A stretch of 64,000 nt of DNA from Octopus bimaculoides (taxonomy: Eukaryota). The notes under the pieces are model-generated. The model ran no database searches, was not told where the DNA came from, and worked only from the letters and a program-made list of their open reading frames with translations. This document shows positions 31,961 to 63,562 of the stretch, in pieces. The stretch lies in contig NC_068988.1 in NCBI RefSeq assembly GCF_001194135.2, positions 51,702,833-51,766,832 on the forward strand. Reading direction: 5' to 3'. A program made the position numbers and the translations under genes. Within the stretch, counting starts at the first letter, position 1; the number at the start of each line of letters is the position of its first letter.

Positions 31961-31995
31961 ACCTTTATGATTAACCCAATAGTACTCATACATAC

Positions 31996-36026: not shown

Positions 36027-36123
36027 CATAAAATGGCTTGATTCTTGGTAGTTTGACATTCCAGTTACAATACTTTTCAATAATATCACCAATGTTGCAA
36101 ACGGTGAAAGCATCTTCACATCC
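36027..36123 (-). CDS. ODC1: ODC coding exon 2 (GCEDAFTVCNIGDIIEKYCNWNVKLPRIKPFY)
   Basis: ctacag|GGA ... TAT G|GTAAGT, 97 nt. The LPRIKPFY motif precedes the PLP lysine. Confidence 0.95.
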
Positions 36124-36946: not shown

Positions 36947-37069
36947 CGTTTTTTTGCGATCTTCTATCAGTTGAGCTACAAGCTCCTTGTGGGAAGGATT
37001 GGGAAGCAGTTCTGGGACTACGATGTTCATTTGGCGTCTCATAATTTCGGAGGAATCTTCAAGCGGCAT
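36947..37069 (-). CDS. ODC1: Ornithine decarboxylase coding exon 1 (MPLEDSSEIMRRQMNIVVPELLPNPSHKELVAQLIEDRKKT)
   Basis: Acceptor ctttcag|ATT at 37102, first ATG at 37069, second in-frame ATG at 37042. Donor ACG|GTAAGT, phase 0, in frame with the next exon. Confidence 0.85.
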
Positions 37070-41338: not shown

Positions 41339-41748
41339 CAGGTGTGGAGAGCCTGCTGGCTTCTAAAGGGCTGGGCTAAGTGCAGCCGTCTGAAAGAAGG
41401 CCAACGTTTGAGAAAATCATTATACTGGTCAATGTTTGATTTGATTTGATTTGAAGCCTACACTTCCAACCAATTGCAAATTTTAGAACACCTATTTATA
41501 CATTTGTTTACACTAGTAGTTATTTGTTTAAAGTAAATACAATTGTATTTAAAATCTAGAAAACTTAAAGAATTTGATGGAAAAATGCCAGGGATGTTTG
41601 TGCTTATTTCAAAATTATTGTTTTTTCATATTTCATTAGAATTTTTATGCACAATGTTTTATAAAATAATAGGTTTAGCACCACAAAAATTTTGAAATGT
41701 TAACTTGTCTGATGCAGCCTTCTAACATAAAAATGTTCTCTATCTCTG
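41339..41748. mobile_element. Degenerate hAT-like non-autonomous element
   Basis: Termini CAGGTGTGGAGAGC and TGTTCTCTATCTCTG are imperfectly inverted. The left flank contains CTAGA. Confidence 0.4.
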
Positions 41749-44700: not shown

Positions 44701-45089
44701 CAAGCCTTGTGCTTTTAGTAGAAAGTATTATTATTATCATCAAGTGTGTTTTGTGCTCTGCAGTGTCTCCATTCATTCAAAGCAACATGACCATGACCAT
44801 GAGAGTGAATAGAGAGTGGGGAGCGAGGAGGGAAATAGTGGTTTAAAACAATGATAGAGGTGAGAGCATTGGAACAGATACAAAACTGCAGTGAGAGTAT
44901 GATGGAGAAATAGAGAGAGAATTCAGTGGATGAGAAGTTAAGCTGGTTAGTGAAGGAGAGATTAGCGACAGAGATAAAAAGTGTACCAGAGAGCTTAAAA
45001 AGAGAAATAAGCTCAAATGTAGTGAGGAGAGGAGCAGCAGATGGCAGCTTAACAGAGATATACTAAACAATAGCTCAAATATAGACATA

Positions 45090-45360
45090 AATATCATGTC
45101 ACCATCACTACCACCATTCATAATGCTTACTATTCCATGCTTGCATAGATGGGTGAGGGCCCTCTCTAGCAATGCATGCTATCAACCATTAGTCCTTTGT
45201 CATTTTTATGAGAACACTCTCCTAATATCAATCTTCAATGTCTCTCATGTCTTTCTAGGTCTCCCTTTTTCCACATGTTCCATCCACTTCAAGTCATCTT
45301 TCATATGTACCACATGCCCATATCAATGTGGTCTTCTCTCTTGCACACTATATCTAATTT
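45090..45360 (-). mobile_element. Degenerate RTE LINE 3' fragment
   Basis: Minus-strand translations IRYSVQERRPH*YGHVVHM and EVDGTCGKGRPRKT. Confidence 0.65.
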
Positions 45361-46219
45361 CTTTTTAACCATTTTGCCCCAGTTGTACTACGTGGTTCAT
45401 GTAATCTAAAATTACAGAACAGAACATGCTCACTACATTTCTTTCTAGTCTTTGTAAATCATCTGCATTCAAGCCCCACATTTCACAACTGTTCAGCATT
45501 CCTAGTTTACACACAAGCACAATACAATTTGCTTTTTAATCAGAGAAAAATCGCCTTTTGTTTTGTTTATGTGTATATGTCATTTTTATTTTTACACCCA
45601 TTTTTTTTCCATACAGGTTTGAGTTTGACACAAGTTATTGAGACGGTATTCTACAACCCTTTCAGTAACCAACATTCATTTTTCAAGGTATTGTTATTCC
45701 ACTATTTTCACATATAATAAAACCAGCCACAACACAGGTAGGGTAGGGGTGAAGGTAGTTGAGAAATGCTTATTACATGACTTATGTTAAATATTTATTT
45801 TTACTATTCATTAGAGGTTATCTCAACATCTGCAAGTTTTGTCTGTGTAAAAGAAGTTAAGACAACAAACTGGCGGAGTTGTTAGAGCAATGAATAGCAT
45901 ACCCTGCAGTGTTTGTTCGGGTTATCTGCACTCTTCGAGTTCAAATTCATTCAAGGTTAGCTGTGCTTTCTATGCTTTTTTGGGTTGATAAAATAAAGAA
46001 TCTCAATCTAAAGCAGTGTCTAGCAGATTGCATTGGTCTTTGCTTGTCTCATGGGAAACATTAGTCACAGAGATGGAAGGCTTCAATGAATGGGTCTACC
46101 ACTAGAAGCATTATCTAGGAGACCTAGACTGAGAAAAACTTTCCAAGTACAATCTATAGTCTCACGAGATACAGCCTCTGTGCATATATGTGTGTGCGTG
46201 TGTGAGGAGAGAGAGAGAG

Positions 46220-46250
<31 letters not shown>

Positions 46251-46299
46251 GAGAGAGAGAGAGATAATTCACAAAAAAAAAAACGAAAAAAAAAAATGG

Positions 46300-46560
46300 T
46301 GAAGACAGGTGGTGTAGACAACAGATGTATTAGTTTAACGATCAGGAAGTGAAGTCTTTAATGTTTCGAGTGTACACTCTTCCACAGAAAGAAACAGGGT
46401 GAGAAAAAAAAGAATGTATAGTGGCTAGCGATCTATCATGGCGAATGCCAGACAGAGGGGTAAAAAGCAGAAAGTACAAAAAAGTTAAGAAAAGTTCAAA
46501 AGCTTCAAATGTCGTGGTGTATTGGAGTGATACAACGGATGTTAAAAGATGGTGAGATAT
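46300..46560 (-). mobile_element. Possible Penelope-like pseudo-LTR fragment
   Basis: Contains a degenerate minimal-hammerhead-like string (CTGTGGA-AGAGTGTACACTC-GAAACATT) on the minus strand. The assignment is an inference. Confidence 0.35.
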
Positions 46561-47209
46561 ATACATATAAAAATTTGTTGACTGTGACCAAGTTCCACCC
46601 GAGGGTTTGTTCAACTGTGTGAGTGTGTAAGTGTGCATCTATCTGTGTAGGACTGTCTATCTTTATTTATTGCTATGTATATCATTTTATGTGTGCAGCA
46701 TGTATATGTGTACAGATGTATCTGTGTATATACATAAATACTTACATGACTTTACAGTAGACTGAGGCTCAATTAAAAAGATCAGAGTTCAACACATTAC
46801 ATAGAGTATATATATTGAGTTATAAGTTGAAGATCTCAATTGAAATTTTAGCCGGTATACTTAGACCAAATCATTGCCTTTTATTTGCATATATAAAAAC
46901 ACAGATAGACATACATAAATTGTTTGGTGTGGAGGTAGAGGTATACATGCACACATACACTAAATCTATATGCTTTAGTTAAGTGAGAGATTCAATGATC
47001 TCATTCATTTTGCAATAATCTCATTAAGATCCATTTACAAATGTGAAAACATGGTTTTGGTACAAGTAGGAAGAAAACAGGGTAGAAAAATTATAAATGA
47101 TGAAACTAAAAGTTTGAAAACCCTTCATTTACTAATAAAACATCTCAAACAACAAATGTGTAATATAACATCTCACCTGGCCAATAGGAACACCTGCACT
47201 CAGCCGATG

Positions 47210-47311
47210 CTAGCTGGGATCCCACGGTGGCTCTGCGTTGAAGTTGAATTTCCGCTTGAAATGGCAGAAGCCTTCGGGATTTTCTATGTAATAAAGACCA
47301 GAACAGCCGCC
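47210..47311 (-). CDS. uCC upstream ORF, part 2: GGCSGLYYIENPEGFCHFKRKFNFNAEPPWDPS*
   Basis: Acceptor ttttttcag|GGC at 47311, open frame to TAG at 47212-47210. The C-terminus FNFNAEPPWDPS* closely matches the recalled AZIN1 uCC end (FDFNAEPPWEPS*). The exon continues 33 nt to the donor CCAG|GTGAGA at 47177. Confidence 0.93.
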   Translation of the reverse strand, partial: GGCSGLYYIENPEGFCHFKRKFNFNAEPPWDPS

Positions 47312-50300
47312 CTGAAAAAAACACAAGAAAATACATTAAAATGGGAACTGGCCCAAAGAATTATTCCACATGCCCTGAATTAACCCTTTTGATACCGACC
47401 CACCAGAAATCATGTCTGTTTCTAAAATACAAAACTTGCAGTTTTAAAAATGTTTATATGAAATTAAAACCTGCTGTAGTTTAAATTAATTAATTGTTAT
47501 AAATTAATTTCCATAGTTGCTTTCATATCATTTCCAAAAGTAATTGAAGTATATAGACAGTGAATTTTATTAGAAATACAGTCATGAATTGCTTAAGGTC
47601 AAAATCAGAATCATTTCTAATCTGTCAGCATATCGAAGTTGACCATTCTTGGGTATATATATATATACAAAAAAAAAAAAAAAAATGCTTGTAATCAAGA
47701 CGTAGGTAAATAAAAATACTAAAAATATAAATATACATGAAAAAGCTTCCATCAGTTTAAACTAATGTCAAAATATCAACCATTTTAGTTGCTGTGATCA
47801 AAATTTTATTTTCTATATAAACATGTTATGACAGAATTTAGGTAAACAGACAGAGCAATATTCTAAACAGTAAGCAGTCAGAAAGACATGGAAAAACTGA
47901 TATAATGTTAAAAGGTAGAGAGGACAGTGAAGTTATTTTACTAGTTGAGTCAATGTTAAACACTGCATAGCTTTTAAAGCAGCTATAAACTATGCAAGCA
48001 ACTCTAATTAGACAAGTATTATTCAGTTATGTAGATATACTTATCTTGATGTTTAACAATCATAAATGATACATTAGAGTAAACAGAAAAGCAAAAGGAA
48101 CCCACATTTTAAATATATTTACATTTTAGCTTATAGAATCACATTACCATCATCAATTAATAAGCCGGTTGGTTGCGCTGTTTACTTTCAATGAGGTAAA
48201 GTATAAAGCAGTTAACAGATACCAGCCATCAATAAGTTTTGGTGTCCGTAGCAGTATATGGTAAAATGTTTTATTGAATTATACTGCCATGCTAGGTTTT
48301 AAAAAAATTAACTAGTTTGTAAACACAGTAGACAAAGGATCTGTAGTGTCTCAGAAAATATATAAACGTTGCATTTGTTTTGAGCCTAAAACACTATATA
48401 TCAAATTTGTTTGTAAGATGACACTAGTTATATTAAGGCATCCACAAGAAATATCATGAAGATAAACTGACAAAATAATCTCATGAACTCGAAAAAATGT
48501 GTATACCTATAAGATTAGCAGCCAAGGCTTTTGATCACACATAGGTTTGCTCAATCTAAACAACACATACATTCATTATGTTAATTAAACTCAAAATTCT
48601 CAGCTCAAGGAGCAAATAGGAAGGACAGCCAAATCAGCCTTTTTGCTTGAACATCAAGATTAAGTAACGATTCGCATGCCACTGAAGATATAACTAATGG
48701 AATGGTCATTTTTGTAAAATATTTTGAATTAATAATATAATCAACTTCTCATCCTATATATTATTTTTTCCCATTTAGTCATGGAGGGATGAGCAGTGCT
48801 CTTGACTGTTAATTGTTCAAGGACTCCCAAGATTGGTAGAAAGAAAGGAGGAAGTTATCTTCAGACTGGAGACATGGCTTGAATCACTGCAACTGAATGG
48901 CCTCTGCCAATAATAGTACTACAGAGCAATGGATTGAACAACCACACAGGTGGGTGAAATAGTAAAACTGTCTTCAGAAATACATTAGATATTTTTGAAA
49001 ATACAAATCTATTTTTCACATAATACAATGTATGAACATTTATAGGACAAAAACTCATTAATTAATTAATAGCTTAATGAGCTGTGAAAAAAAAATGAGT
49101 AAAAGTTCAACCATGCAATCTTTCTGAAATATTGAAAGTTAGGTTAGATGAGAGTCCCTTGTACCAACTTTAATGCATTTAGTTTTCTGCCTAAACAAGT
49201 TGTGGGCAGTAACATCATCATTTGACATCTGTATTCCATGCTGGCATGGGTTGGACACTTTGACAGGAGTTGGCAAGCCAGTGGACAGTGCAAAGCTCTA
49301 TTGTCTATTTTGGCATGGTTTCTATGGCTGGATGCCATTCCTAAGGCTTAACCTTAGTGTACTGGGTGCTTTTTACATGGCACCAGTACCACTGTGGTCA
49401 CAAAGTAACTTGCAAGACAAAGACCCTCATGACAGGGAGTGGGAGTAGTATTGGGGGAGGTGGCTTTGTGCCAGTTGATAAGAGGTTTAAGTATAAAAGA
49501 GCAATAGAGATAGGTGTCTTGCTATAGATGAAACACATGGCTACCCCAGTTGGAAATGAAAGAAGAGAAAGGAAGCTGGCAGTGAAGAGTGTTGGACGTA
49601 CTTTCAAGGTACAGTGGAGATGAAGATAAGTGAAGTGGTAGAAGGGATTGGACAAGGTGAGTGGGCAGGAGGATGCTTCAATAGAGTGTGAAGAAAGATG
49701 GCTAGAGATGAAGCAGAAGTGAGATGTATAGGAGTGGCTCAGAAAGGGCATTGACAGTGATAAAGAGGTATAAGGTGTAGCAGAAGGGGGAGAGAGAACA
49801 ATGAATGAAGGCACTGAAAGGGGATGATGTATGCATGTGTGTATAATAGTGGAATAGGTTGGATGGTTTGACAGGATCTGATGAACCACAGGGTTGCATA
49901 GAACTCTACCGTTAACTTTAGCATGCATGTGTGTGTGTATATATATGTACACACACATACACGTTTATATATATATATATATATAACTACAAGTGTAAAC
50001 TATAAAACCACTAGATTTATTACTGAAAAACTACCAAGTAGAATGAAGTAAGCAAGTCTAATATCATTAAAATGTATTGCTAATATTTTACTTGGTGTGA
50101 CTAGCTATTAGTTACCATAGCAACTTAGACCAATAGTGCTTCTTTGTTGAAATTGGAAACTAGAGAGAATTAGGAGAAAAGCAGGATTCCCAGTTTCTAC
50201 TTAGAACAGACAAACACTTTATAAAGTGAATAGAAAGAAGAGATTGCACATATCAAAAATGATCAGAGAGAATTCTCTAAGACAATGAGGGAAAATATAA

Positions 50301-51452
50301 GTACTGGAGTTGATTCATTAAATTAAAACTCTTCAAAGTATTGCTCTACCATGGCTGCAGTCTAACGGGTAAAAAATGTGAGATAAATTGTGTTTTGGCC
50401 TTGATTGTTTTTGTTTGTGTGTAATAATGAATTTAGGACCACATCATTCAATATACAGTTTTGTTTTTGAGATGGCAGGATATAATTAAGATTTGACTGC
50501 TCTTTCTAGCAGATCAAGCAAACACATAAGCCCCTGCTTTGGTTAGTTTTGGCTACAAGCTATGTAAAATTTTAATAGAATGGAACCACCTAGTAGATTT
50601 TGAATTACATTTCAGTTGCACATGGTTACCTCTTAACTATTAAGTCTGACTTAATAAAATAAATGACTGAGGTTATAATTAGAGATACCAACTGAAAGAA
50701 AAAAGAATTTCATTGTGAAAAATCTAATCAGAAATACTATGCTGTGAGTGAGGGGGGGGGGAGACTTCACTGTTGTTGATATTAATCCATCTAAGAATTT
50801 AGAACAAGTATTATTAATGAGTCAGTTATAGACACCATTTTACAGAAATAAAGAAAATTCATCCAAAATAATTCTATTTGATGTTTAGAAAAACAATATT
50901 CATTTCTTACAATGTATATAAAAACAAAATGGTTGATTGAGAGAAATAAAAGCTACATAACTCACAATAGGAATCTATTGTAAGCTATGTATCTTTAATT
51001 AACAATCCACTACCACCATGGTGAACACCATAGGGAAAGAGGTAAGCTTCCAGCAAACTGAAACCATAGATAATTCACTTCACTTACACTACTAAGCTTT
51101 TTGGAGAGGACTTTTGTGCCTAGTCAAAAAGTAAAGCGATATTTCATCACGTCTTGCGTTAGCTGCTGCAGAAGTTCCATCTTTTCCTTCGTCTTTAAGC
51201 CCCAACTACCACCTGGTGCCTGGTGATGAATAGAGAGCTTTGGCCGTGCGTAAATGGCAAGTACAGAAGCTGCAGAGAGTATGGAAAATACAAACAGGTA
51301 GAGATGTGGAAGTTACCAAATCTATCAACTTTCAAGCAAAAGCAAAATTACAAGTATATATTTCATTTTCCCTACATCTCACAAACGAATCCCAACAAGC
51401 TTGCCTGCTAAAGTGATTCATAAGCCATGCTGTATGTATGTATATGTGTGTT

Positions 51453-51508
<56 letters not shown>

Positions 51509-54028
51509 CACACACACAGCATGGTACATTTGGTTTCCTTCACTGGTTATGCTATTCTCTGATAAAGATTACAAAACAATAAGACTTAAATAGAAAGTGA
51601 GTGCATTTCCCTGATAATTCACAATTGAAATCACTGCCTACATTTTGTTTTAATAGATAATATTAAAAATGTGATTGCACAACATTCTGAAATAGCTTAC
51701 TTGATATGATAATCGTGCATATATACTTGACATATAAATAAAGTATTATTATATATTCAACATAGTTCTTCATAAAAATACCAAAGTCTTCCCAAAATTC
51801 CATATTCCTAGCCCACTTTCACATGAAAGCTTACACTTAAGACTTATACTTTATGAAAAACTATTGCAGCTTTTAAATCTGCAGCACTGCCTAACTCGGC
51901 AAATAGTTTTAGGTAATTGCCACCTTATAAGGTTGGCAGAAGAAAAGGAAAAGTACACATCTACAAAATTCCTTCACAATATCAATGCTAGCTTCTAAAA
52001 TCAGTCTCAGCTAATTCCTTTGACACTTAAACTATAATACTACTACAATGAATACAAACTAGATCTTTAAAATATACTTATAAAAAGCAATATTTACATA
52101 AAGCAAAACTAGAAAGTATCTTATATTCTAGGTTTAATTACATTGGTTTACTGAGATACCATGAAAGTACCCTAACACTGTTACTTTGTGTAGCCATTGT
52201 TCCTACCTTATCATACTTGAACAAGCTGTTGCTATTGAAAAACTGAAATTCCAACCATCAACAGTGAAAGAGCAACAAGTGGTCTATTCAAACTTACAGA
52301 AAGAAAAACAGCAATGGACTCAGTAATAGGGTAAGAAACAGGCAGTGCAAATTCAGCATGTACATGCTTCTAAGTGGTACTAAGAGCACTAACATAATAG
52401 TATACACAATCAATTTGAAACCTACAAGTTTTGATTGATGGTCATTGTTTAGACCAGGTCATATCTGAAGAAGCAGATCTGACAAAAGGCAATATAGGCC
52501 ATAACAGTTCTGTCTTTCTTCATCAAACTATTTTATCCAATATGTACCTCCATTTTTAAGACACTGGGAGGCTTGTTAGTTAAATTTAGCAGATCGAAAG
52601 CTATCATCTTGTGAATGTTGATGGCTCTGAAAAATGTGATTTGATAAGGACGGAGTAAAGGGCCAAAAGAAACTTGTAGATGAAATATGATTCAAGTTCC
52701 TATTTTCCCTTTATATCATATCATTTCAAGCCTATGACCCTAATTATATATATATATTTTTATCAAAACTTTTGTCTATGCTGTCAATATCACTTGAATA
52801 TGCCTTGAACGTGAGGTAGAGATAAGTGTTCACAAACACAAAAGAATAAAGTTAGAAGATTCAGGATAGAATCATTTTATTGTTATTTACAAAACTATAA
52901 CAGATGCAATTAAATTTTAAACAAGTTGAACACGTAACACATGAGAATACAATCAAAGCATTAAAACAAAAAAGCTAATACTATTATGGACATTCATTTT
53001 AGCAATCAGCAGTTAGCTTCCATATAACTGAAAGATTTCCAACTTTGGCACAAGGGTATAAGCTAACTTTACTCGACATCAGTGCACGACTTATTTTATC
53101 GACAGGAGACGAATGAGAGAAAACTGACATAGTAAAGAGATAAAAGAAAGAACAACTATGTTATTCAATAAAATTCTGTCTATTTCTACAATCAGACTTC
53201 ACAATCAGACTTCAAATAATTAAATAACGAGTTGATTGATACTGGATAAAACGTATTTTTGAAATAGGCAATCTTGTGATTAAGGATTAGTTAGTACTAC
53301 AGGCAAAACACGGAGGCAGAAAGAGAAAAAAATAAAGGTAGTAAATAAGTTGTATTTATAATCATAAAATGAGTAAAGGAAGACCATTTCGAAAGCACAT
53401 GGCAGCAAAAGCGGAGATAAGTGCTTTAATATTGGGAAAGAGATCAGGCTGTAACTGAAATACCATTTCATTTAAGGCAGTGGTAGAATAGTCGAATAAA
53501 GCGTTTCCAGGTTCCTCTCCGTTGTAAAAGAAAAAAAACTCTCCACAGCTACTACTACTAGTCATATGCGGCATTATCTACTGCTATGAAACTAGAAATT
53601 GAGGTGGACTTGTTTCACGCATTTACATGCACTTTCGGAGAAACGAATACGTACACCGACACTAATAAAAATGTCTTCAGAAATGGCTTCTCCATCCAAG
53701 AATTTCCGAGACAGATGGACGCGACTAAACAGCCATGGCTATCTGACATTATCTTAGCCGAGAATTTGTGTTGAAGCTAATGCCTGCAAGGTAGAGAAAC
53801 AGGAAGAACTCAACACAATTTCATAACAAGACAATGTGTGCCAATGAATGTGTGTATATGTGTGTGTATTAAAAAAATCAATATGGTCACCTTGACACAT
53901 AACCAAGGTAGAACGTTAATCAGATTGACACACACTACACAACTCAATCATAACGACTTACACACACAAAGCTCAGCCGGACTGACAATACACCACAGCT
54001 TAACTGGATTGTACACACAAAATTCAGA

Positions 54029-54060
<32 letters not shown>

Positions 54061-55258
54061 TAAACAGCCTTACTATGGAGACAGATAAAATGCCCAATGC
54101 CAAAGACATCATCTAAACGCATTGTCTTGCTTAAGGTATTGAGAGAGAGAGAGAGCGAGTGGGGGGTACGGTCAGCTGGTAATGAATAAATACATTTCTA
54201 GAAATGTCACGCAGTAGAAAGCAGACGATGTTAGAACGTTTACGAATGATTTTATAAGATTGAAGCATTCAGGGAAGTAATAAATCCCTATAACTTGGTG
54301 GATAGTGGTTTCTTTCCATGAGCAGGGAAGATAAAGTTTCCCCAAGGACTTCAGTAAATTATTCTAGTATGAATCGAAAATCCTCAGTTTACGAAGAAGT
54401 CTCAATTTACAGTTCTCGATAACCATAAGGCTTCGATTTAAATCAATTTTAAACCAACCTTGAAGCAACTCACCCGTCACAAGAGCTTCAGTCCATACGA
54501 AACTAAAAATTACAGCATAGACTCTAGAATCGGGACTTTAATCGGAAATAATAATTAATAATAAATATATGTAAGCAACAGATGACTGTTAGATGCTAAC
54601 GCATGTACATAAAAGGATATTTTTGATAAGAATTGCTGGTTATTGAATGTCCATTTAACTATAAATGTTCAATATAATCAATGAAAAATAGTAAAGGGTT
54701 GCAGAGACTGGCAATGGCCAGAGAGGAGATAACGCAGTGGACAGCAGAAACTAGCAGACCATCGTTGTGTCTGTCCAACAGCATAATGATGCGTTTTATA
54801 GCACGCAACTATTCGAAATTTCATAAGCAACAAGCAAGCCGGTTTATTTTAATATTGAAGCACTTTCTGAAAGAGACATATTTTGAACATTAAATATTTC
54901 TTTTATTAGTAATTACTCATTCGTAGTGATTAGCTACTATTTCTAACTGGTTGAGAGGCTACATAAAACTTACTGTCTGAAGAAATAGCAGTCAAATCTT
55001 CACTAAATCACATACCAGTCTTCAAAAGAGGGATGCATTAAGGATAATGTAGTTCTCGATTTTGTCTACATTTAAAGATGTAATAGCCACGGTTTGCACT
55101 CCCTAAGATTAAAGCTCATATCATATAGAGTACAAATGAAACACATTGCTATCCAGACTCAGCAAAGTGAAGGAAACATTATCTATTTATCAACTGTTAT
55201 AGACTGAAAATAATAAATGTTACCAAAAGTAGGTGAGAATTAAAAGGTAGAGATGGAC

Positions 55259-55606
55259 TATATGTAATCTGAACCTTTCCCCCCCTTATTTATTAATTTT
55301 TTTTACGGAATCCCACGTTTTAGGCTATGGAGATTCCGATTCTGAAAAAAAAATTTTTGAAAAATTTCAATCCCCCCCCCACCACCACCACCAAGCAGGC
55401 TATTTACATGCTAGAAATAACAGCCAAATCTCACAAAACTAGTGTTAGGGTTAGGTTTACCCTGTGGATCTATATAAAAACCGGGGTGGGGGATCGAAAT
55501 TTTGAAATTTTTTTTTCGGAATCGGATTCTCCATGGTCTGAAACATAGGATTCCGTAAAAAAAAACAAATTTTAAAAGGGGGGGGGGGATACCCAGATTA
55601 CATATA
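55259..55606. mobile_element. Palindromic MITE with about 125-bp arms
   Basis: The left arm tatatgtaatctg..ttttacggaatcc..tggagattccgattc.gaaaaaaa..aaaatttc.atccccc is mirrored at 55485-55606. The spacer contains TTAGGGTTAGGTTTA. Confidence 0.85.
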
Positions 55607-58454
55607 CTCCATCTCCACCAATTAAAAGGTTGTTTTTATTAAACTGTCACAATTCCGATTTGTAGTCATGAAACTAGACATAAATAATACGTGAGCACAA
55701 GAGAAAAGTAGAAACAGGTAAGAAACTAGAGACCAATCTAAATAATAATAAACATACAGCGAACATATTTCTCGTCACGACTGAAGATGGAAATGAATAA
55801 ATAATGAGTAGATTCTCTCCACACACAGAGATTTACAAAGCCTCTAAACATTCGCTCGAACTGCTTGAAACAAGAGCTAAAATCTCCTAAAAATTGAAGC
55901 CTATTAATTTTTAAAAAGGACATTGGACAGTGTGGTCCTAGAAAAACAAAAGAGAAGACTGTCATGGTCGGAACGCTTCTGACTGTTAGTCGACACAATC
56001 AGAACTGAACACACACACACAAACAATCTGACATGGCCGACAGTTAATCATGTAAGCAGGTGGTGGTGGTGGTGGTGATGGTTGCCACGTGTGGTACCAG
56101 AGATAAAGTCAATGTTGGTTTTACTGTCACGCTAATAATCAACTGAAGTGAAGTCATCAGTATAAAATTAGAAACAACAGTCGCTCGCTGTTTGAAATAA
56201 CAATAAAATGATTTTGGTAAAAGTAGTAGATATAACGAAGATACCGCAGAAGTATCAAACCGGAGAACACCAGTTTGCCCCAGCCAACGTGAGATTATCT
56301 AAACTCACAATCGACTTGCTATAAAAAAAGATTTTCCTCAGTTTTTTTTGTTTGCAAAAGTAAAGATATTGGATAATATACATAGTGCACTGCCTTATAA
56401 AAAAAGATGCGATAGTCGTGGTTCGGAGCAGGTGTGTGACCAGAGGTAAAAACCGTCCCACGTTGCTAAAACCACTGGCAAAAATCTTACATATAGCTAG
56501 GATTTATGTCATGTGTTAAGAAACTGATCTCATCTGGAACAAGATAGGATGGTCTTGACTGGAACATTTTTGATCTAGGACTAAAACAACAGGCCTTTGA
56601 CCAACTCTAACACTGTTCTATCTTTTATTTTTCTAGTTTATAAACAGCTTGCGAGAGAGAGAGGGAGAGAAAGAGAGATTTGTTACGCTAATAGTACTAA
56701 AGTAAACTTGATAATTATATGCAACAAAAAGAACTGCTACGAATTCAATGCTTGGCTGGCTAGTAAAGAACGAAAAAATTAACAACATTGGGGAAGAGGG
56801 TCAGAGGTCGGATAGAAATTATATGTAAACTACTGTCCGAAACACAAACACATCACATGGTTTAGAATTTAACCAAAGTAAGACATGAAGCCAAAGAATG
56901 ATTGTGATTAAGTGGAGGTAGTAAAAACCAACGATTCTAAGGCGAAAAAAATCGACATTCTGCAGAGTGAACAGATTGTGGGACACGAAAAATTACTGGA
57001 AACACAATGTGATGTATAACATGCGAAGCAGAGTATATAAACAGTGATATAAAGAGGAAAAAAGAAAAACGCCTACTTAACTCGCAGGCTTAAAAAACAT
57101 TCCAAATATCAACACAACCAAACGCTCTAACGGAAGGAAGAAAGTACGTAAACTATTTTAGTATGGATCTAAGGAATAAGATTGAGTATGACCCCTCTTA
57201 AGATCTGAAAAGCCGAGGTGCCAGGCACACACAAATTGTAGTAGAATAAACACTCCGCTAAGGTATTATTCAAAGTGCGAATGAAATAATAAAAAGAGTA
57301 CTCAATAGAAATGCCATAATTTAAAAAGAGTAAAACATAAGTCTATCGAGCAGTTCTCACTTCGTATTTTGTAGACATATCCATCACACACAGGCACGTG
57401 GCATTGCGGTTAGATTAAGGCCACGGGCTTCGATTGCTGTGCTAATTTATCTTGAACGAATCGTCCCTCATTCCATTTCCTCATCGAGTTTACTACCGTC
57501 GGCGTTCTTATTTAGGTGTTGAAGCTGTTCACCTACTGAGCAAAACGGTTCATTTCACGTTGCTCCAATGGGCTGGTACAACCCTCTTTTTCCCCCTGTA
57601 GTTATCACATCTTGGATGCTTCCCGAGGATCAAGAGGCAGAGCGGTCTTTCTGTCTGCTCAAGACGACATAGGCACCTAAAACAATTAGCAAAAGTGCAT
57701 GCGCACGCACACACATGAACCATCGCATTTCTCGAAGTAATTTGCATATATCCCACCCCGTACTGGGTTAGCAAAAGAGAACACAATAAACAATGATATA
57801 CAAAAGGGATGATGTACACAACTGAAACGACAGATCATAGATCTGCTCGGTTAAGTTGAACGGGGTTAAACAACATGCATGTGTATTAACCAAATTCGAA
57901 GCCAGTTTAATCATAAATATTCATCAGGCTGACCCGATTAAATAGTTTGGCCAACAAAAGTGCCCCAGCTAAAGCTTTCTACAAATGTCTTAAAGACTAC
58001 GTCATTCAAGGTTTCCTTTCTTTCAATGATCTTATTCGTAGGCATTGTGAAATCGATGAGATCAACATGGCTAGTGCTATTAGACAAAAGCAGGGACTGC
58101 AGGCGAAGAATTTCTGAGGACTCACGTCTCTAGGAAGGAAGAAAAGATTGAAATGTGATTAGTGAGGGACTATGGATGACGAATACACACTATGCGTTAT
58201 GACCAAGTCGGATGGGCCGAAATAGAGATAACACGAGATTAGTCAGCTATATATTAGCAGTGAATGAGACAGAAGTAGGAATTGCTATCTTTTAGCAGAT
58301 CAGGCAACCTCGCAGAAGCTCTCTCGTTTGCTCGATGAAGTTAGCATATTGTGTTACAATATTATTTGAAAACAGACGACAACCATAAATGAACAGTTTT
58401 CAGTAAGTAATACCAATCGACAAAAGTATTACTTATCTGGATCTGAGTTATTCT

Positions 58455-58668
58455 TTTCTACTCTAGGCAGAAGGCCCGAAATTTTGGGAGAGGGGGGGGG
58501 AAGTCGATTAGATCGACATCAGTACGCAACTGGTACTTAATTTATCGACCCCGAAGGATGAAAGCAAAGTCAACCTCGGCGGAATTTGAATTCAGAACGT
58601 AAAGACAGACGAAATACCGCTAAGCATTTCGACCGGTGTACTAACGTTTCTACCAGCTCGCCGCCTTC
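58455..58668 (-). mobile_element. SINE family A, best-preserved copy
   Basis: Complete ggcggcgagctggtagaaacgttag...gaattcaaattccgccgaggttgactttgc...ggggtcgataaattaagtaccag with CpGs retained. Confidence 0.88.
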
Positions 58669-61242
58669 TGGATCTGAATAATTGCTGGAAGTGTTAGCTA
58701 TATCTCTCTCAAATTACATCCTACTGTCTAGTACATGATATACAAAAAGGTGGGATGATGAACACGATCAGAATGCTTTGATCAATCGGCCTGCTCGATC
58801 AGATTGACCCGAGGGACTAAACAATAAACATGTGTGAATCAGACAGCGGGGGTCCAATTCTTGTTTAGGAGTGTAATAGCAATCGACATCATTACTGCCA
58901 TATACAATAGTAACAGTGGAATGATGTAACAGAACCTCTGGTAGCAGTATTAAAGAAACCCAACTATGGAATCAACAAACACACATTGCCTGTTGAGTAA
59001 CAAATTACTTTTACAGGTTGTAGCAGCTTCGTTGTCAAGGAAACAAAGATTGCAATTAACGGAGGTATATTCCTCGAACAAGCCAACAAATTCTACCATC
59101 ACTCACAAGCCGTAGTAAGCAAGGTGCACACAGTACACACTGCTGTAAGCTGAAATGAGGATTACTGTATATCATCAGCTAATTAGACATGGAGAACAGA
59201 CAGGCAACTTTTACTCTGACTATTCAGATTGCTACTGCAGGCGATGGACTAATTAAATATTGTAAAATAATCCTGATTATTATTATTATTATTATTATTA
59301 TTAAGGGAGCTCTCTAAAACGATACAGTCGAAGTATTTGCCCTTAAGCAGACCCTTTCTCACAGCAGGAGGTCTGTCAGTTAGGGAGGGCAATTCAATTG
59401 ATAAAAAAACATGCAGTGGGGGACAGCTTTAACACCCACATAAAAACACCGATGATAGTAAGCTACGTTGGTGAGGATATGGAGCGAGGGGGGTGGGATT
59501 TGTACAAGATAAATTAGGACAGGAAGGCAAGGAGACCAGTTGGATCTCATTCATAACTTCTAACAATAGACAGTAAGAGAAAATGTTTCTTCATTGGGTA
59601 GCTTAAGTGGTACTGAAGAGGGAGACTAAATTTTGAAGTAGGGATGGTAAAGAGATATTAGTACAAGGCTGTAAAAGGGGACGTATATACTAAACTAGTT
59701 TACACGCAGTACGAAACTTAACATTTTCAAGTGTTTAACACTTCAGCGATTTATTCATCCACCTGCCTCCAGCTTTCAGCCCAAACAAAGTGAACTGGTT
59801 GGTATTGATATAGATTTAACAAAATGGTGTTAGAAATAATGAAATAAAGCTGGTTTAATCCACGTAGATATCACCATAAAGGAATGTCTGTCGAGAGAGG
59901 AGGGGCAGTTAGTAATAATCGAAAGATAAAACGTACAGAAAATTAAGAAATGATGATAACTATAACGTCAGAAAGACATTGGTTAACACAATATAAATAA
60001 TTGTAGGTGATTAACTTGTATTTTAGATTAATCATCCCCCGCACTATTATAGCGCTGGAATATGTGACGATGACAGCAAATAAATTTAGATGAGCTATTT
60101 ATTTAGACATTTCATTAATCAAGAAACAGATAATAACGATAGAGAGGTTGACGTAAATAAAATTCGCCCTCACCGCCAAAGGATCGTAGATTGGGAAAAT
60201 TGAAAACGACATGTGATGAAATAATGGCGACTGGTCCATGCGTAGTTGGTGCAACAACAGAACAAGGCGGATAATAGGAGGCAACTGACAATTTCAATGA
60301 GATTGGAAGATATAAACAGCATTATTTATATATCACACACGTTAAATAAAAATTTAACAGCACAACCATTTTGCTACATTGAATTATAAATGAAAAAAGA
60401 TGAAGACAGAAAGCTAAAAACGAAATGCGTTCTAATGAGTTATATACAAGAGCTGGAGGTGAAAGCTAGTAAAGAGCCATGTAACCAAACCATCTCTAAA
60501 ATAACTAATGTTAAACGTGATTACAATTATTTTAGTTATTATAACAAAGCTAACAGAACAAAAGAGATAGCCAAAGATGGTCTTCTATAAGATGACAAAC
60601 CATATAAAAAATACTGTCAGGTCTTAAAACCTTGTTCAAGAAGTAAATTATATTTTTCCTTTTATCTACCGTTTCCATTACCAAAATATCAATAGTATGG
60701 CGATGTTCTTTTTTTTTTTTCTTTTAAATATACTAAGAATAGTAGGAAAGTAAACCAAACGGATTATTAACGATTGGAACAAGAATCTGAAAGTAAAAGA
60801 GACTAAACAGAAAAAAAAAAAGAAAAATTACAGATGGTGACAGATCGAATCACAAGAGTCGCAATGGCACCACCAGCAATATTAGTTAGCTACAGTAGTA
60901 GCAGAAGCAGTATCGCGGTAATAAGAACATAGTAAATGAGTTTAGTAGTAGATGTCTATATATAGCCAAACAGTGAGTTACATACACCATGGCGAGAGAT
61001 AGATAGATGTACAGCTCATTACAGTCAGACTAGACAGACACAATCAGACGATATTCCATTGAGAAAAAGTGTGAGTGTGGGAAAGACAGACATTAAATGA
61101 TAATGATGGTAATGATTTCTTGCCCAATATAAAATAACGTTTGCGTTTTGCAGTATGTTTACACATGCACACACATGTGTATAGGGCTGTATGTCAGTGT
61201 CTCATCTCATCCCCTCTGTAAGTAGAGGGTAGGAACAAATAC

Positions 61243-61289
<47 letters not shown>

Positions 61290-61310
61290 CATATGTACGT
61301 ATGTATACAC

Positions 61311-61624
61311 ACACATTATGTACTCATAAAAATAAGAGCCAGCAATAAAAATCAATAATGCTAAATGGCTACGTAGACAGAGAGAGAGAGTGAGAGGCTC
61401 TCAGCAATTACAATCTGACCGATCACACATACATAAGTATATGCAGGTCTGTCTCTCACATANNNNNNNNNNACACATTATGTACTCATAAAAATAAGAG
61501 CCAGCAATAAAAATCAATAATGCTAAATGGCTACGTAGACAGAGAGAGAGAGTGAGAGGCTCTCAGCAATTACAATCTGACCGATCACACATACATAAGT
61601 ATATGCAGGTCTGTCTCTCACATA
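61311..61624. other. Duplicated block of about 152 bp across a 10-N gap (61463-61472), probably an assembly artefact
   Basis: 61311-61462 is repeated from 61473, differing only by one AG unit in the (AG)n run and bounded by microsatellites. Confidence 0.85.
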
Positions 61625-61633
61625 CGTACGTAC

Positions 61634-61682
<49 letters not shown>

Positions 61683-62731
61683 CACGGATAAATTGATTTC
61701 TTGTAGTTCTTGAATCAGTAAGAAAAAAAAATTACCGTAGAATAAAAAAAAACAACATATTTAATACCTGTTGAGGAAATTAGTTGTATTCCATCACTTA
61801 AAGAAGGTAATATTATATACATATAATGTATGTGTGTGTATGTATGTATACACACTTCGCATATTTGTGTTGTATGCGTTTGTTCTGTATATACGCACAT
61901 ATGCGAATGTATGTGTGTGTATATATATACATATATATATATACATACATATATATGTGTGTGTGTATGTATGTATACACTGGTGTATGCATTTAAGTCT
62001 CAAATTGCGTGTTTAATTCAAAACATAATTATTGTTTTGGATCATAGTTCACTGAACAATGGATGATTTGAGTGAGAAGATAATATATTGTTTTTATCTG
62101 GACATTAGAATCACCCAATTAAACTGACCTTACTCAGAGGTCGGGTTTAATGTGCATTGAAGGTGTGAGATAGGGTTAAGAAACCAGAATTTATAATATA
62201 TATATTCCTGTAGCCAACGTGTAAATGCGTTTATGTGTATATGTTTAGCCCCAAATCAGCACTGATTACGCTAGAAATATCAGCCAAATTAAAGACGTTC
62301 CAGTCGCAACCATCGCGAACGTTTGTACATTTAAGACCATAGAACAGAATTGTTTAATGAATCCCTTAAGGAAGAGGGAGGATATGGTGCGATGTGATAT
62401 GAGGACTTCGCTGCTGTTTCTAGCAAATCGAGCGATCACACAGAGACACCCGTCATATGTGGTGAAAACACATTCAGGACCTGGTAGATTGCTTATACAT
62501 GAATGTTCCCGTCAGTAAGAATTATGGGGGTAATATAGATTATATAATGCTGTAGGTGTTTTCAGTAACAACAGATTGGATATTACAGAACAGTGTACAT
62601 GTATGTGTTCTATGGCTAAGTGCATGTACGTATATACGTACGTAAAACTATAGATCTTAAAGCAAATATCAACTGGCTAATCAATAATTAAACTGAGCTA
62701 TCAATGAAACCACACTTTGAGATATATATAC

Positions 62732-62773
<42 letters not shown>

Positions 62774-63353
62774 GTATATATTAGTACAATGATTACAGCT
62801 CGATGCCAGACACAACCAAACCGTGATTGTGCCCCATTATATGTAATGTGTACAGGTATCTGTATTTGAATAGCAGGAGTTATTGAAATGGGAAATACAA
62901 GACTTTCTTTCATACTATCCCAAAATGGTGATGATGTAACGTCAACTGAACAGAAAAAACCCCCCAGAAATACAGTATACTACTGTAACTATGTATGAAC
63001 AAGGAGCATATACAAGGGCCTTCGAATTACTAGATATAGCAGCCAAAACAGGATGTGAGAATAGTCATAGACAGTCACAACTTAGGTATACTAAACTAAG
63101 ATTGATGATTTAGGACTAACAGACAATAGATGATCAAACAACGATGTCAACTACAAATTTGTACCCAATCTACGGACTATGTCGTGAACAACTTCAATAT
63201 ACCCATTATCTTCAATATATAGACATACACACTATGCAATTTTTAGAAATATGAAGAAAAAATACAGCAAAAGCAAGTACCGTTAAGTGAAGCTAGGTAA
63301 CGGTTTAACTAAAAAATATATATTTATATTAAATATATTATTTATATATTTAC

Positions 63354-63401
63354 CTGAACAGAAGCTCCACAACCGTTCTCCTTACTGTTTTTCCCCGGAA
63401 T
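63354..63401 (-). CDS. uCC upstream ORF, part 1 (AUU start) in the first exon of the ODC gene: IPGKNSKENGCGASVQ
   Basis: Minus strand reads cagcaag-ATT CCG GGG AAA AAC AGT AAG GAG AAC GGT TGT GGA GCT TCT GTT CAG|GTAAAT. The ATT has A at -3 and is followed by CCG, like the AUU-CCG start recalled for AZIN1-type uCCs. There are 16 open codons ending at a phase-0 donor that joins the PPW exon in frame. Confidence 0.85.
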
Positions 63402-63414
63402 CTTGCTGATTGTG

Positions 63415-63562
63415 GACTAACACATTAAAGCATAATACAGCCAAAGGAAAAATTGACACACCGGCGTTAGAATGTAAAGCGTAATTGATTCGCCTTCGAC
63501 TTCCTATCAGAGTGTGACACCGGTGAAACAGGCTGCGCACAGGTCATGTAAAATGTTATATA
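63415..63562 (-). promoter_or_regulatory. Candidate ODC core promoter / 5' end
   Basis: TATATAA at 63562-63556 lies in a CpG-containing patch. An Inr-like TTAGTC at 63420-63415 lies just upstream of the uCC AUU. The TSS cannot be determined from sequence. Confidence 0.45.

What the first reader, a model, noticed from the sequence alone, without database searches (positions are those of the whole stretch)
47177..63401. Hidden AUU-initiated, PPW/PS*-terminated polyamine-sensing uORF (uCC) split by a 16-kb intron in the ODC leader
Seen: splicing 63401-63354 to 47311-47177 gives one 49-aa frame starting at ATT (context AAG-ATT-CCG) and ending NFNAEPPWDPS*. The spliced leader has no AUG between this ATT and the ODC start, and the spacer from uCC stop to main ATG is 66 nt. 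Established: AZIN1 and some ODC-homologue mRNAs carry AUU-initiated uCCs. High polyamines inhibit eIF5A, ribosomes pause at PPW, queuing boosts AUU initiation and the main ORF is repressed; PS-stop is a separate polyamine-sensitive termination motif. Inference: this cephalopod gene is autoregulated the same way. The peptide is invisible to ATG-based ORF tracks, and its Cys-containing N-terminal two thirds look lineage-specific, so this instance is probably unannotated, although the class itself is known.
Basis: partly seen in the sequence, partly recalled or inferred. Interest (0 to 1): 0.92.

Follow-up and report, generated by a model that had tools for sequence, protein, structure and literature searches.

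The report
Octopus ODC leader carries known uCC
The 5' leader of the Octopus bimaculoides ornithine decarboxylase gene really does encode, across a 16-kb intron, a 49-codon AUG-less upstream reading frame that is the orthologue of the known polyamine-sensing "uCC" of ODC-family mRNAs, so it is a sound but expected example of a known regulator.

Summary
Observation confirmed. On the minus strand, 63401-63354, 47311-47177 and 37102 onward join through canonical GT-AG sites. The result is a 49-codon frame without AUG, AUU...NFNAEPPWDPS-UAG, 66 nt upstream of the ODC AUG. The coding sequence I assembled is identical to Octopus bimaculoides ODC isoforms X1 and X2. The N gap lies inside intron 1 and does not touch the frame.

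Transcript assemblies from two other cephalopods carry exactly these junctions. Every mollusc ODC leader I could read has the same element: A at -3, AUU, 46-50 codons, EPPW(D/E)PS-stop, and no AUG in any frame before the main AUG. The amphioxus gene has the same 33-codon second exon. Substitutions are wobble-biased (5/2/15 by codon position; pN 0.06 against pS 0.47).

This is therefore a genuine orthologue of the uCC described for AZIN1 and invertebrate ODC mRNAs. Polyamine sensing is inferred by homology, not shown. The claim that the N-terminal two thirds are lineage-specific is wrong.

Three extras: both leader introns are ancient; about 45 non-coding nt after the stop are conserved across molluscs; and a short AUG uORF ends 10-31 nt before the AUU in 11 of 13 leaders.

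The parts
63556..63562 (-). TATATAA, candidate TATA box about 30 nt upstream of the inferred transcription start
   Evidence: Read directly. The 5' end of cephalopod-B transcript L017 aligns to about 63530. This is inference only.
63354..63532 (-). Leader exon 1 (5' end approximate; 3' end exact, CAG|GTAAAT)
   Evidence: BLAST of transcripts L017 and L003 ends at 63353. The donor was read.
63417..63433 (-). Two overlapping 2-codon AUG uORFs (ATG CTT TAA and ATG TGT TAG). The second is in frame with the uCC, and its TAG lies 5 codons before the AUU.
   Evidence: Short AUG uORFs ending 10-31 nt before the AUU occur in 11 of 13 leaders.
63354..63401 (-). uCC codons 1-16 (IPGKNSKENGCGASVQ). The AUU initiator is at 63401-63399 in the context AGCAAG-AUU-CCG, with A at -3.
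   Evidence: A at -3 and AUU followed by (C/A)CG are invariant in 13 of 13 full-length uCC leaders, and also in the Aplysia gene.
47312..63353 (-). Intron 1: GT-AG, phase 0, 16,042 nt including the 10-N assembly gap at 61463-61472
   Evidence: Aplysia has an intron at the same position (L020 3123-9084).
47213..47311 (-). uCC codons 17-49 (GGCSGLYYIENPEGFCHFKRKFNFNAEPPWDPS)
   Evidence: The second exon also holds 33 uCC codons in Argonauta, Aplysia, scallop and amphioxus.
47222..47230 (-). Pro-Pro-Trp codons 44-46 (CCA CCG TGG), the predicted polyamine/eIF5A-dependent pause site
   Evidence: Invariant in all 15 sequences, with synonymous variation in both Pro codons. In mouse Azin1 the PPW is at residues 47-49 of the uCC (bioRxiv 10.1101/710061).
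47210..47218 (-). Pro-Ser-stop (CCC AGC TAG)
   Evidence: The CCC AGC codons are invariant in all 15 sequences; the stop is TAG or TAA, followed by a pyrimidine.
47177..47209 (-). First 33 nt of the conserved non-coding block after the stop (CATCGGCTGAGTGCAGGTGTTCCTATTGGCCAG), ending at the exon 2 donor
   Evidence: Alignment A1. No codon periodicity and no consensus hairpin.
37103..47176 (-). Intron 2: GT-AG, 10,074 nt
   Evidence: The junction is proven by transcript L009 from another Octopus species and by transcripts of cephalopods A and B. The same intron is 440 nt in Argonauta, 719 nt in Aplysia and 608 nt in scallop.
37090..37102 (-). Continuation of the conserved post-stop block across the exon junction (ATTGTTTGTATTA)
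36947..37102 (-). Exon 3, with the ODC initiator ATG at 37069-37067 (context CTCTCT-ATG-C, pyrimidine at -3)
26062..37069 (-). ODC coding region in 11 coding exons, all GT-AG: 37069-36947, 36123-36027, 35205-35129, 33016-32844, 32133-31996, 31065-30900, 29658-29499, 29021-28897, optional microexon 28569-28543, 27146-26932, 26170-26062
   Evidence: The translations are identical to O. bimaculoides XP_014767555 (469 aa) and XP_014767558 (460 aa).

Best explanation
The window holds the Octopus bimaculoides ornithine decarboxylase gene. [quoted passage not shown]

Shown here:
- The 49-codon frame is conserved as protein.
- It starts at a conserved AUU with A at -3, just downstream of an in-frame stop.
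- The stretch from that AUU to the ODC AUG contains no AUG.

Inferred from the mouse AZIN1 work:
- Most scanning 40S subunits pass the weak AUU and translate ODC.
- The few ribosomes that start at the AUU pause at Pro-Pro-Trp (codons 44-46) when polyamines are high, because polyamines interfere with eIF5A.
- Scanning subunits then queue behind the paused ribosome, back to the AUU about 130 nt upstream. This raises initiation at the AUU and blocks access to the ODC AUG.
- ODC synthesis therefore falls when polyamines are abundant.

Because the downstream ORF is a catalytically competent ODC, the loop here is direct end-product feedback on the biosynthetic enzyme.
For: Splicing:
- All leader and coding exons have canonical GT-AG sites.
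- Transcript assemblies of two other cephalopods (ODC 75-76% identical) contain ...GTTCAG|GGCGGCTGT... and ...GGCCAG|A(C/T)TGTTTG... and map collinearly onto 63353, 47311-47177 and 37102.
- An Octopus species transcript (ODC 98.7% identical) confirms the exon 2/exon 3 junction.

Identity of the main ORF:
- It is identical to RefSeq O. bimaculoides ODC X1/X2.
- It matches Pfam PF02784 and PF00278.
- It scores higher against human ODC (472 bits) than against AZIN1 (379 bits).
- PFYAVKCN and WGPTCDGLD are present. By established ODC enzymology these hold Lys69 and Cys360.

Coding conservation:
- 13 full-length uCCs, from cephalopods, bivalves, Mytilus, heterobranchs, caenogastropods and one non-mollusc, are 46-50 codons long. 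All start A(-3)NN-AUU-(C/A)CG, with an in-frame stop 3-13 codons upstream. The Aplysia uCC, assembled from two genomic exons, is 49 codons and starts the same way.
- Over the last 13 sense codons of 15 sequences, minimum changes by codon position are 5/2/15.
- Octopus against cephalopod B gives pN 0.06 and pS 0.47. The ODC coding sequence gives pN 0.135.

Scanning logic: 0 ATG in any frame between the AUU and the main AUG in 13 of 13 leaders, where about 47 are expected from base composition.

Mechanism from the literature:
- The AZIN1 uCC is about 50 codons and AUU-initiated. Spermidine represses the main ORF 6.5-fold, and this is lost with AUU>UUU or when the last 10 codons are changed (PMC4458265).
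- PPW pause, eIF5A and queuing are described in PMC9082881, PMC11058473 and PMC8705083.
- Animal uCCs of six phyla end in Pro-Ser (PMC2811004).
Against: - No O. bimaculoides transcript spanning exon 1/exon 2 could be read.
- The closest transcript (L009, another Octopus species) begins exactly at the first base of exon 2. This could reflect an alternative first exon or simply a break in the assembly graph.
- No ribosome profiling or reporter data exist for any mollusc, so translation of the frame and its polyamine response are inferences.
- The +4 base after the AUU is C or A, never G, so the initiation context is only partly 'Kozak'.
- In mouse liver disome data the strongest collision site in the Azin1 uCC was at residues 14-15, not at PPW (bioRxiv 10.1101/710061). 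The pause geometry is therefore not fully settled even in the model system.
- The primary papers (Ivanov 2008, 2018) were not available to read.
Confidence: 0.8

Rival explanations
1. The uCC is translated and represses ODC, but mainly through slow termination at Pro-Ser-stop together with the conserved nucleotides just before and after the stop. It would act by blocking or tuning reinitiation, rather than through the PPW-eIF5A-queuing route.
For: - The last two sense codons are CCC AGC in all 15 sequences, although synonymous codons exist.
- The stop is always followed by a pyrimidine, and about 45 nt after the stop are conserved across molluscs.
- The first ~9 nt after the stop also resemble amphioxus: CATTTGCTG against CATCGGCTG.
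- The review notes that Pro-Ser is also the end of the plant AdoMetDC small uORF, and that Pro near a stop affects termination (PMC2811004).
Against: - In AZIN1, mutation of PPW alone derepresses the main ORF, and other pause sequences can replace it (as summarised in PMC9082881 and PMC11058473).
- PPW is invariant here too.
- The two routes are not exclusive.
Confidence: 0.2
2. The exon 1/exon 2 join is a minor isoform in O. bimaculoides. Most ODC mRNAs would then use another first exon, so the frame lacks its AUU and the element is weak or differently initiated in this species.
For: - The only same-genus transcript contig (L009) starts exactly at the first base of exon 2. That is what a branch in an assembly graph would produce.
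- RefSeq lists four accessions for isoform X1, which suggests several transcript variants.
Against: - Exon 1 with its AUU, 16 codons and donor is about 85% identical to the cephalopod A and B transcripts up to the exact donor position. That would not be expected of an unused exon.
- In cephalopod A, several independent runs give the same leader.
Confidence: 0.12
3. Initiation is not at the AUU but at another near-cognate codon in frame (AUC at 63410-63408), or by reinitiation after the mini AUG uORFs.
For: - In the octopus, the open frame begins 5 codons before the AUU and contains AUC and AAG.
- Short AUG uORFs end 10-31 nt upstream in most species.
Against: - In bivalve L004 and heterobranch L005, no near-cognate codon other than the AUU lies between the upstream in-frame stop and the conserved peptide.
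- The AUU with A at -3 is the only start-like codon conserved in 13 of 13 leaders.
- 10-31 nt is short for reacquiring a ternary complex (general knowledge of reinitiation).
Confidence: 0.07
4. The frame is not translated. The conservation would reflect an RNA or DNA element that happens to be open.
For: The flanking non-coding spacer is also very conserved (62 of 66 nt between octopus and cephalopod B), so nucleotide-level constraint does exist in this leader.
Against: - Variation is wobble-biased (5/2/15) and pN/pS is about 0.13.
- Length differences among the 13 aligned uCCs keep the frame.
- The stop position is conserved.
- By contrast, the true non-coding block shows no periodicity and tolerates a 2-nt indel.
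- The homologous AZIN1 frame has been shown experimentally to act through its AUU and its encoded C-terminus (PMC4458265).
Confidence: 0.03

Closest known systems
uCC of vertebrate antizyme inhibitor 1 (AZIN1) mRNA (Ivanov, Loughran & Atkins 2008; Ivanov et al. 2018)
   Same: - About 50 codons with no in-frame AUG.
[quoted passage not shown]
- PPW close to the C-terminus (residues 47-49 in mouse, 44-46 here), followed by x-Pro-Ser-stop.
- It lies in the leader of an ODC-family gene.
- The expected logic is the same: high polyamines repress the main ORF.
   Different: - The main ORF here is an active ODC, not the catalytically dead decoy. Feedback therefore acts directly on synthesis rather than through release of antizyme.
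- No experiment exists for the octopus element.
uCCs of invertebrate ODC mRNAs ('animals belonging to six phyla', review PMC2811004)
   Same: The octopus element aligns along its whole length with those of bivalves, gastropods and a non-mollusc, and in its second exon with amphioxus. It shares both leader intron positions with Aplysia, and intron 2 also with scallop and amphioxus.
   Different: Only species-level details differ: three Cys residues shared by the cephalopods, a 16-kb first and 10-kb second leader intron, and 2-codon instead of 5-11-codon AUG uORFs upstream. I could not check whether a cephalopod sequence was already in the 2008 data set.
Fungal ODC uCCs (Pezizomycotina, Basidiomycota, Zygomycota)
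   Same: Non-AUG-initiated conserved frames in ODC leaders, with two adjacent prolines near the C-terminus (PMC2811004).
   Different: They are thought to have arisen independently, are 22-100 codons long, and lack the animal Pro-Ser end.
AdoMetDC (AMD1/SAMDC) regulatory uORFs
   Same: Polyamine-responsive, peptide-dependent uORFs in the same pathway. The plant small uORF also ends in Pro-Ser (PMC2811004).
   Different: They start at AUG, are much shorter, and work by termination stalling or leaky scanning between two uORFs, not by queuing onto a near-cognate start.
Antizyme +1 programmed frameshift
   Same: A polyamine sensor built into translation of an mRNA in the same regulatory circuit.
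   Different: A recoding event inside the main ORF. I checked the frames after the uCC stop and found no conserved shifted or read-through frame.

Membership tests
uCC of ODC-homologue mRNAs | Lies in the 5' leader of an ODC-family mRNA, upstream of and separate from the main ORF | tested here: met
   The stop lies 66 nt before the AUG of an ORF identical to O. bimaculoides ODC. The same arrangement is seen in 13 other leaders.
uCC of ODC-homologue mRNAs | About 50 codons, no in-frame AUG, conserved near-cognate (AUU) initiator near the 5' end in a favourable context | tested here: met
   The frame is 49 codons. AUU with A at -3 is invariant in 13 of 13 leaders, and an in-frame stop lies 3-13 codons upstream. 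The +4 base is C or A, not G.
uCC of ODC-homologue mRNAs | Conserved C-terminus with adjacent prolines (PPW) and, in animals, a terminal Pro-Ser before the stop | tested here: met
   The frame ends ...NFNAEPPWDPS*. EPPW(D/E)PS* is present in all 9 sequences found through the ODC protein, independently of the motif, and in the 7 found by pattern.
uCC of ODC-homologue mRNAs | Conserved as a coding sequence (synonymous-biased substitution, frame-preserving length changes) | tested here: met
   Changes by codon position are 5/2/15. pN is 0.06 against pS 0.47. Lengths of 46-50 codons all keep the frame.
uCC of ODC-homologue mRNAs | The leader allows leaky scanning: no AUG between the weak start and the main AUG | tested here: met
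   0 ATG in any frame in 13 of 13 leaders, against about 47 expected.
uCC of ODC-homologue mRNAs | Polyamine-dependent repression of the main ORF that needs the AUU and the last ~10 codons | not testable with these tools
   Known only for mouse AZIN1 (PMC4458265). Needs reporters with and without spermidine or DFMO.
uCC of ODC-homologue mRNAs | Ribosome pause at PPW, eIF5A dependence, and queuing that boosts AUU initiation | not testable with these tools
   Literature only (PMC9082881, PMC11058473, PMC8705083). Needs Ribo-seq or in-vitro translation.
Active ornithine decarboxylase (as opposed to antizyme inhibitor) | Group IV decarboxylase fold with the PLP lysine (PFYAVKCN) and the catalytic cysteine (GPTCDGLD) retained | tested here: met
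   Both motifs are present in the assembled protein. Pfam PF02784 and PF00278 match. Human ODC scores 472 bits against 379 bits for AZIN1. The roles of the residues come from established ODC enzymology.
Non-AUG N-terminal extension of the main ORF | The upstream frame is continuous and in frame with the main ORF | tested here: not met
   A conserved stop codon follows Pro-Ser in all sequences, and the spacer length varies from 64 to 162 nt.
Stop-codon read-through or frameshift extension after the uCC | The conserved sequence after the stop behaves as coding in some frame | tested here: not met
   There is an in-frame TGA in bivalve L007 and a 2-nt indel in heterobranchs, with the downstream nucleotides retained. 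Column entropy by codon position is 0.51/0.66/0.63, so there is no periodicity.

The most novel reading that the evidence does not exclude
The uCC may be only the middle part of a three-part leader module conserved across molluscs:
1. A short AUG uORF that ends 10-31 nt before the AUU.
2. The uCC itself.
3. A non-coding block of about 45 nt that starts at the uCC stop and runs across the exon 2/exon 3 junction (31-33 nt after the stop in molluscs, 35 nt in amphioxus).

I found no description of the flanking parts in the papers I could read. They would tune how many scanning subunits can start at the AUU, and what happens to ribosomes at or after the Pro-Ser stop: pause strength, reinitiation on ODC, or interplay with the exon-junction complex.
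Probability: 0.3. Interest if true: 0.55.

Novelty: new member of a known kind. Interest (0 to 1): 0.3.

Why it matters
It adds cephalopods to the species known to carry this element. It shows that the polyamine-sensing uCC sits ahead of the active ODC gene throughout molluscs. The exon structure is the same in octopus and Aplysia (16 + 33 codons), and the 33-codon second exon, with an intron 31-35 nt after the stop, is shared with scallop and amphioxus. This points to an origin before the protostome-deuterostome split.

For annotation, it is a reminder that ATG-based ORF calling and protein databases miss this regulator entirely: no related peptide was found among 5.8 billion protein clusters.

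For specialists the octopus case itself is expected. The features that could open new experiments on how uCC-mediated control is tuned are the conserved block after the stop and the positionally conserved AUG uORF upstream.

Tried and rejected
- **Peptide search.** Searching the 49-aa peptide against the protein collection found no candidate. Short or partial leader ORFs are evidently not in it, so that search was wasted.
- **Primary papers.** Ivanov 2008 (PNAS) and Ivanov 2018 (Mol Cell) are not held under DOI or PMC id. I relied on reviews and citing papers.
- **Coding hypotheses for the block after the stop.** Read-through and the -1 frame ('QLASAECRCSYWPDCLY') looked tempting. I rejected them because of an in-frame TGA in L007, a 2-nt indel in heterobranchs with the downstream nucleotides retained, and no codon periodicity.
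- **RNA structure for that block.**
  - The RNAalifold consensus is only -1.66 kcal/mol, with no compensatory pairs.
  - Single-sequence folds of whole leaders show no shared pairing.
  - Rfam finds nothing in the window or in four leaders.
- **Exon 1 in other genomes.** It was not found within about 9-10 kb upstream in Argonauta or scallop, so the intron 1 position is confirmed only in octopus and Aplysia. In amphioxus I searched only for the PPW exon, not for exon 1.
- **Other content of the window.** There are no tRNAs and no real ORFs of 130 aa or more; those listed are N runs or low-complexity sequence.
- **Vertebrate AZIN1 leader.** I could not obtain one for direct comparison. AZIN1 ranks too low in the ODC-seeded searches.

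Full report
**The observation**

- Exon 1 contains ...AGC AAG ATT CCG GGG AAA AAC AGT AAG GAG AAC GGT TGT GGA GCT TCT GTT CAG followed by GTAAAT. The ATT is at 63401-63399 and the last exon base is 63354.
- Exon 2 begins after a long pyrimidine tract and CAG at 47311. It runs GGC GGC TGT ... GCA GAG CCA CCG TGG GAT CCC AGC TAG (stop at 47212-47210), continues for 33 nt, and ends GGCCAG|GTGAGA at 47177.
- Exon 3 begins after TTTCAG at 37102 and reaches the main ATG at 37069.
- Joined, these give a 49-residue frame, IPGKNSKENGCGASVQGGCSGLYYIENPEGFCHFKRKFNFNAEPPWDPS*. PPW is at codons 44-46.
- There is no ATG in any frame in the 216 nt from the ATT to the main ATG, and the spacer is 66 nt.

The assembly gap at 61463-61472 lies inside intron 1 (63353-47312), about 1.9 kb from the exon 1 donor, within ordinary AT-rich sequence. 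It makes the intron length (16,042 nt) an estimate. It has no bearing on the frame, which is set by the splice junctions.

**The gene**

I assembled eleven coding exons with GT-AG borders from 37069 to 26062.

- The two products, with and without a 27-nt microexon at 28569-28543, are identical to Octopus bimaculoides ODC isoform X1 (XP_014767555, 469 aa) and X2 (XP_014767558, 460 aa). The window is therefore O. bimaculoides.
- The protein matches both Pfam ODC domains. It retains PFYAVKCN and WGPTCDGLD, and scores higher against human ODC than against antizyme inhibitor 1 in the PDB (472 against 379 bits).
- It is therefore an active ODC rather than a decoy. The assignment of the catalytic Lys and Cys to these motifs rests on established enzymology.

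**Are the exons joined?**

I could not look up the window's own spliced protein in the assembly index. Related proteins could be looked up.

- A protein 76% identical to the octopus ODC is encoded on transcript contigs from many sequencing runs (L001-L003, L010-L015). A second, about 75% identical, is encoded on L016-L019.
- All octopods in the database, including Argonauta, are at least 87% identical to the octopus protein, and all other molluscs are at most 61% identical. These two are therefore other cephalopods, probably decapodiforms. The species are unidentified.
- Both carry ...AATCAGCAAG ATT CCG GGC ... GTT CAG GGC GGC TGT ... CCA CCT TGG GA(T/C) CCC AGC TAG, then 64 or 66 nt, then ATG CCG CTT GAA.
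- BLAST places them on the window in three collinear blocks that end or begin at 63353, 47311-47177 and 37102.
- A transcript from another Octopus species (ODC 98.7% identical) confirms the exon 2/exon 3 junction. That contig starts exactly at the first base of exon 2. I note this as a caveat, because it may indicate an alternative first exon.

**Is it a conserved coding frame?**

I read leaders from transcripts of three more distant molluscs found through their ODC proteins (L004, L005, L007). I also read genomic loci of Aplysia, scallop, Argonauta and amphioxus. One scan of JGI metagenome and metatranscriptome contigs with the 24-nt degenerate pattern for EPPW(D/E)PS-stop gave seven hits. 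All seven lie 78-162 nt upstream of an ODC ORF. By their ODC proteins they are bivalves, Mytilus, heterobranchs, caenogastropods and one non-mollusc.

- All 13 full-length uCCs read from single sequences are 46-50 codons long. They start A(-3)NN-AUU-(C/A)CG and have an in-frame stop 3-13 codons upstream. In two of them no other near-cognate codon lies in between. The Aplysia uCC, assembled from its two genomic exons, is 49 codons and starts the same way.
- Over the last 13 sense codons of 15 sequences, the minimum number of changes by codon position is 5, 2 and 15.
- Between octopus and cephalopod B the uCC has pN 0.06 and pS 0.47, while the ODC coding sequence has pN 0.135. The leader peptide therefore evolves more slowly than the enzyme.
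- No ATG occurs in any frame between the AUU and the main AUG in 13 of 13 leaders, where base composition predicts about 47 in total.

These are the signatures of a translated, scanning-dependent upstream frame.

**Comparison with what is known**

- A review by the discoverers states that uCCs occur in the leaders of ODC homologues in animals and three fungal groups. Most start at non-AUG codons, usually AUU in a good context. Nearly all have two adjacent prolines near the C-terminus, and in animals of six phyla the frame ends Pro-Ser (PMC2811004).
- For mouse AZIN1 the uCC is about 50 codons. Spermidine represses the main ORF 6.5-fold relative to DFMO treatment. This is lost with AUU>UUU or when the last ten codons are changed (summarised in PMC4458265).
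- Later work mapped a polyamine-dependent pause to PPW, which is at residues 47-49 of the mouse uCC (bioRxiv 10.1101/710061). It implicated eIF5A and proposed that scanning ribosomes queue behind the paused ribosome and so boost AUU initiation (summarised in PMC9082881, PMC11058473, PMC8705083).
- Every sequence-level criterion is met by the octopus element. The functional criteria cannot be tested with these tools.
- I found no held paper that mentions a cephalopod ODC uCC, and the peptide has no relative in the protein collection. The instance is therefore probably unannotated, but the kind is well known. I could not read the 2008 and 2018 primary papers, so I cannot exclude that a cephalopod EST was already in their alignment.

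- The N-terminal two thirds are not lineage-specific. The alignment shows a shared core, ASVQGG.S...Y.E.PEG, and Mytilus is 58% identical to the octopus peptide overall.
- The Cys after PEG(F/L/Q) recurs in scallop and amphioxus, and after PEAV in Aplysia.
- The intron is not a local oddity either. Aplysia has exon 1 with exactly 16 codons (L020 3075-3122) and a phase-0 intron.
- Exon 2 holds exactly 33 uCC codons, followed by 31-35 nt and a GT donor, in Octopus, Argonauta, Aplysia, scallop and amphioxus.
- Only the intron sizes differ. Intron 2 is 10,074 nt in O. bimaculoides but 440 nt in Argonauta, 719 nt in Aplysia and 608 nt in scallop.

**Additional features noticed**

1. About 45 nt after the uCC stop are conserved at the nucleotide level in all molluscs sampled: TAG YATYKGCTRAGNGCARGTGTTYC..YTGGCCAG|AnTGTTTGTA, running across the exon junction.
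   - There are 17 invariant columns in 13 sequences, and conservation stops after about column 47.
   - The block is not coding. There is an in-frame TGA in one bivalve, heterobranchs have a 2-nt indel with the downstream nucleotides kept, and there is no codon periodicity.
   - I found no consensus hairpin, no shared fold and no Rfam match.
   - The non-mollusc L028 lacks the block. Amphioxus shares only the first ~9 nt and TTGTT after the junction.
   - In cephalopods the whole 66-nt spacer is 62 of 66 nt identical between octopus and cephalopod B. That is more conserved than synonymous sites in the uCC.
2. The last two sense codons are always CCC AGC.
3. A short AUG uORF of 2-11 codons starts 24-51 nt upstream of the AUU and ends 10-31 nt upstream of it in 11 of 13 assessable leaders. 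In the octopus it takes the form of two overlapping 2-codon uORFs at 63433-63417. The peptides are not conserved, but the position is.

I could not establish whether these flanking features are already described.

**Verdict**

The element is an orthologue of a known regulatory uORF class, so it is a new member of a known kind with modest interest. The mechanism is inferred by homology with good confidence. The open points are the usage of exon 1 in O. bimaculoides itself and the function of the conserved flanking features.

Noticed in passing
window 47209-47177 and 37102-37090 (minus strand); also L004, L005, L007, L017, L020-L027: About 45 nt of non-coding sequence right after the uCC stop, spanning the exon 2/exon 3 junction, are conserved across bivalves, gastropods and cephalopods. 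They show no codon periodicity, no consensus hairpin and no Rfam match. The function is unknown.
   Followed up: partly
window 63433-63417 (minus strand); L003, L017, L005, L022, L024-L028 and L020 upstream of the AUU: A short AUG uORF (2-11 codons, peptide not conserved) starts 24-51 nt upstream of the uCC AUU and ends 10-31 nt upstream of it in 11 of 13 leaders. The octopus has two overlapping 2-codon uORFs, and the second shares the uCC frame.
   Followed up: partly
window 63353-47312 and 47176-37103; L020, L021, L029, L030: Intron 1 is at the same position in octopus and Aplysia (16 + 33 uCC codons). The 33-codon second exon, followed by an intron 31-35 nt after the stop, is also present in Argonauta, scallop and amphioxus. 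Only the sizes differ: intron 2 is 10,074 nt here, against 440 nt in Argonauta.
   Followed up: yes
window 47218-47213 (minus strand): The final Pro and Ser codons are CCC AGC in all 15 sequences compared, including those found without any motif bias, whereas the other Pro codons vary at the wobble position. This suggests a nucleotide- or tRNA-level constraint next to the stop.
   Followed up: partly
window 28569-28543 (minus strand): A 27-nt microexon (VCSSWNKDK) with GT-AG borders distinguishes ODC isoform X1 (469 aa) from X2 (460 aa). It is present in the Callistoctopus cDNA-derived protein and absent from the proteins of cephalopods A and B.
   Followed up: partly
window 37075-37066 (minus strand): The ODC AUG has a weak context (CTCTCT-ATG-C, pyrimidine at -3), identical in the three cephalopod transcript sets and in Argonauta. 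The other molluscs mostly have A at -3, and all have A at +4.
   Followed up: no
window 8245-8108 and 7596-7459, flanking the gap 7669-8061: Identical translated stretches (TLNDDDDDDDDDDIYEYILLF...) lie on both sides of an assembly gap. This is a repeat or an assembly duplication. Further gaps are at 2832-3041 and 13827-13909.
   Followed up: no
window 23382-23275 (minus strand): A short open stretch, ...GRGKPRKTWDDVVRKDLQMLGLT, resembles the tail of a retrotransposon ORF. This is from memory and was not searched. Related short repeats (…SNPCQHGK…) recur in the window, in the region downstream of the gene and in an ODC intron.
   Followed up: no
L003 1-35; L010, L011, L013, L014 1-23: The 5' end of L003 looks like an 18S rRNA chimera (from memory). 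Four contigs from independent runs start with Illumina adapter remnants that abut ...(GT)TCGCAATCATCG. This probably marks the true 5' end of the cephalopod-A ODC mRNA, about 105 nt before the AUU.
   Followed up: no
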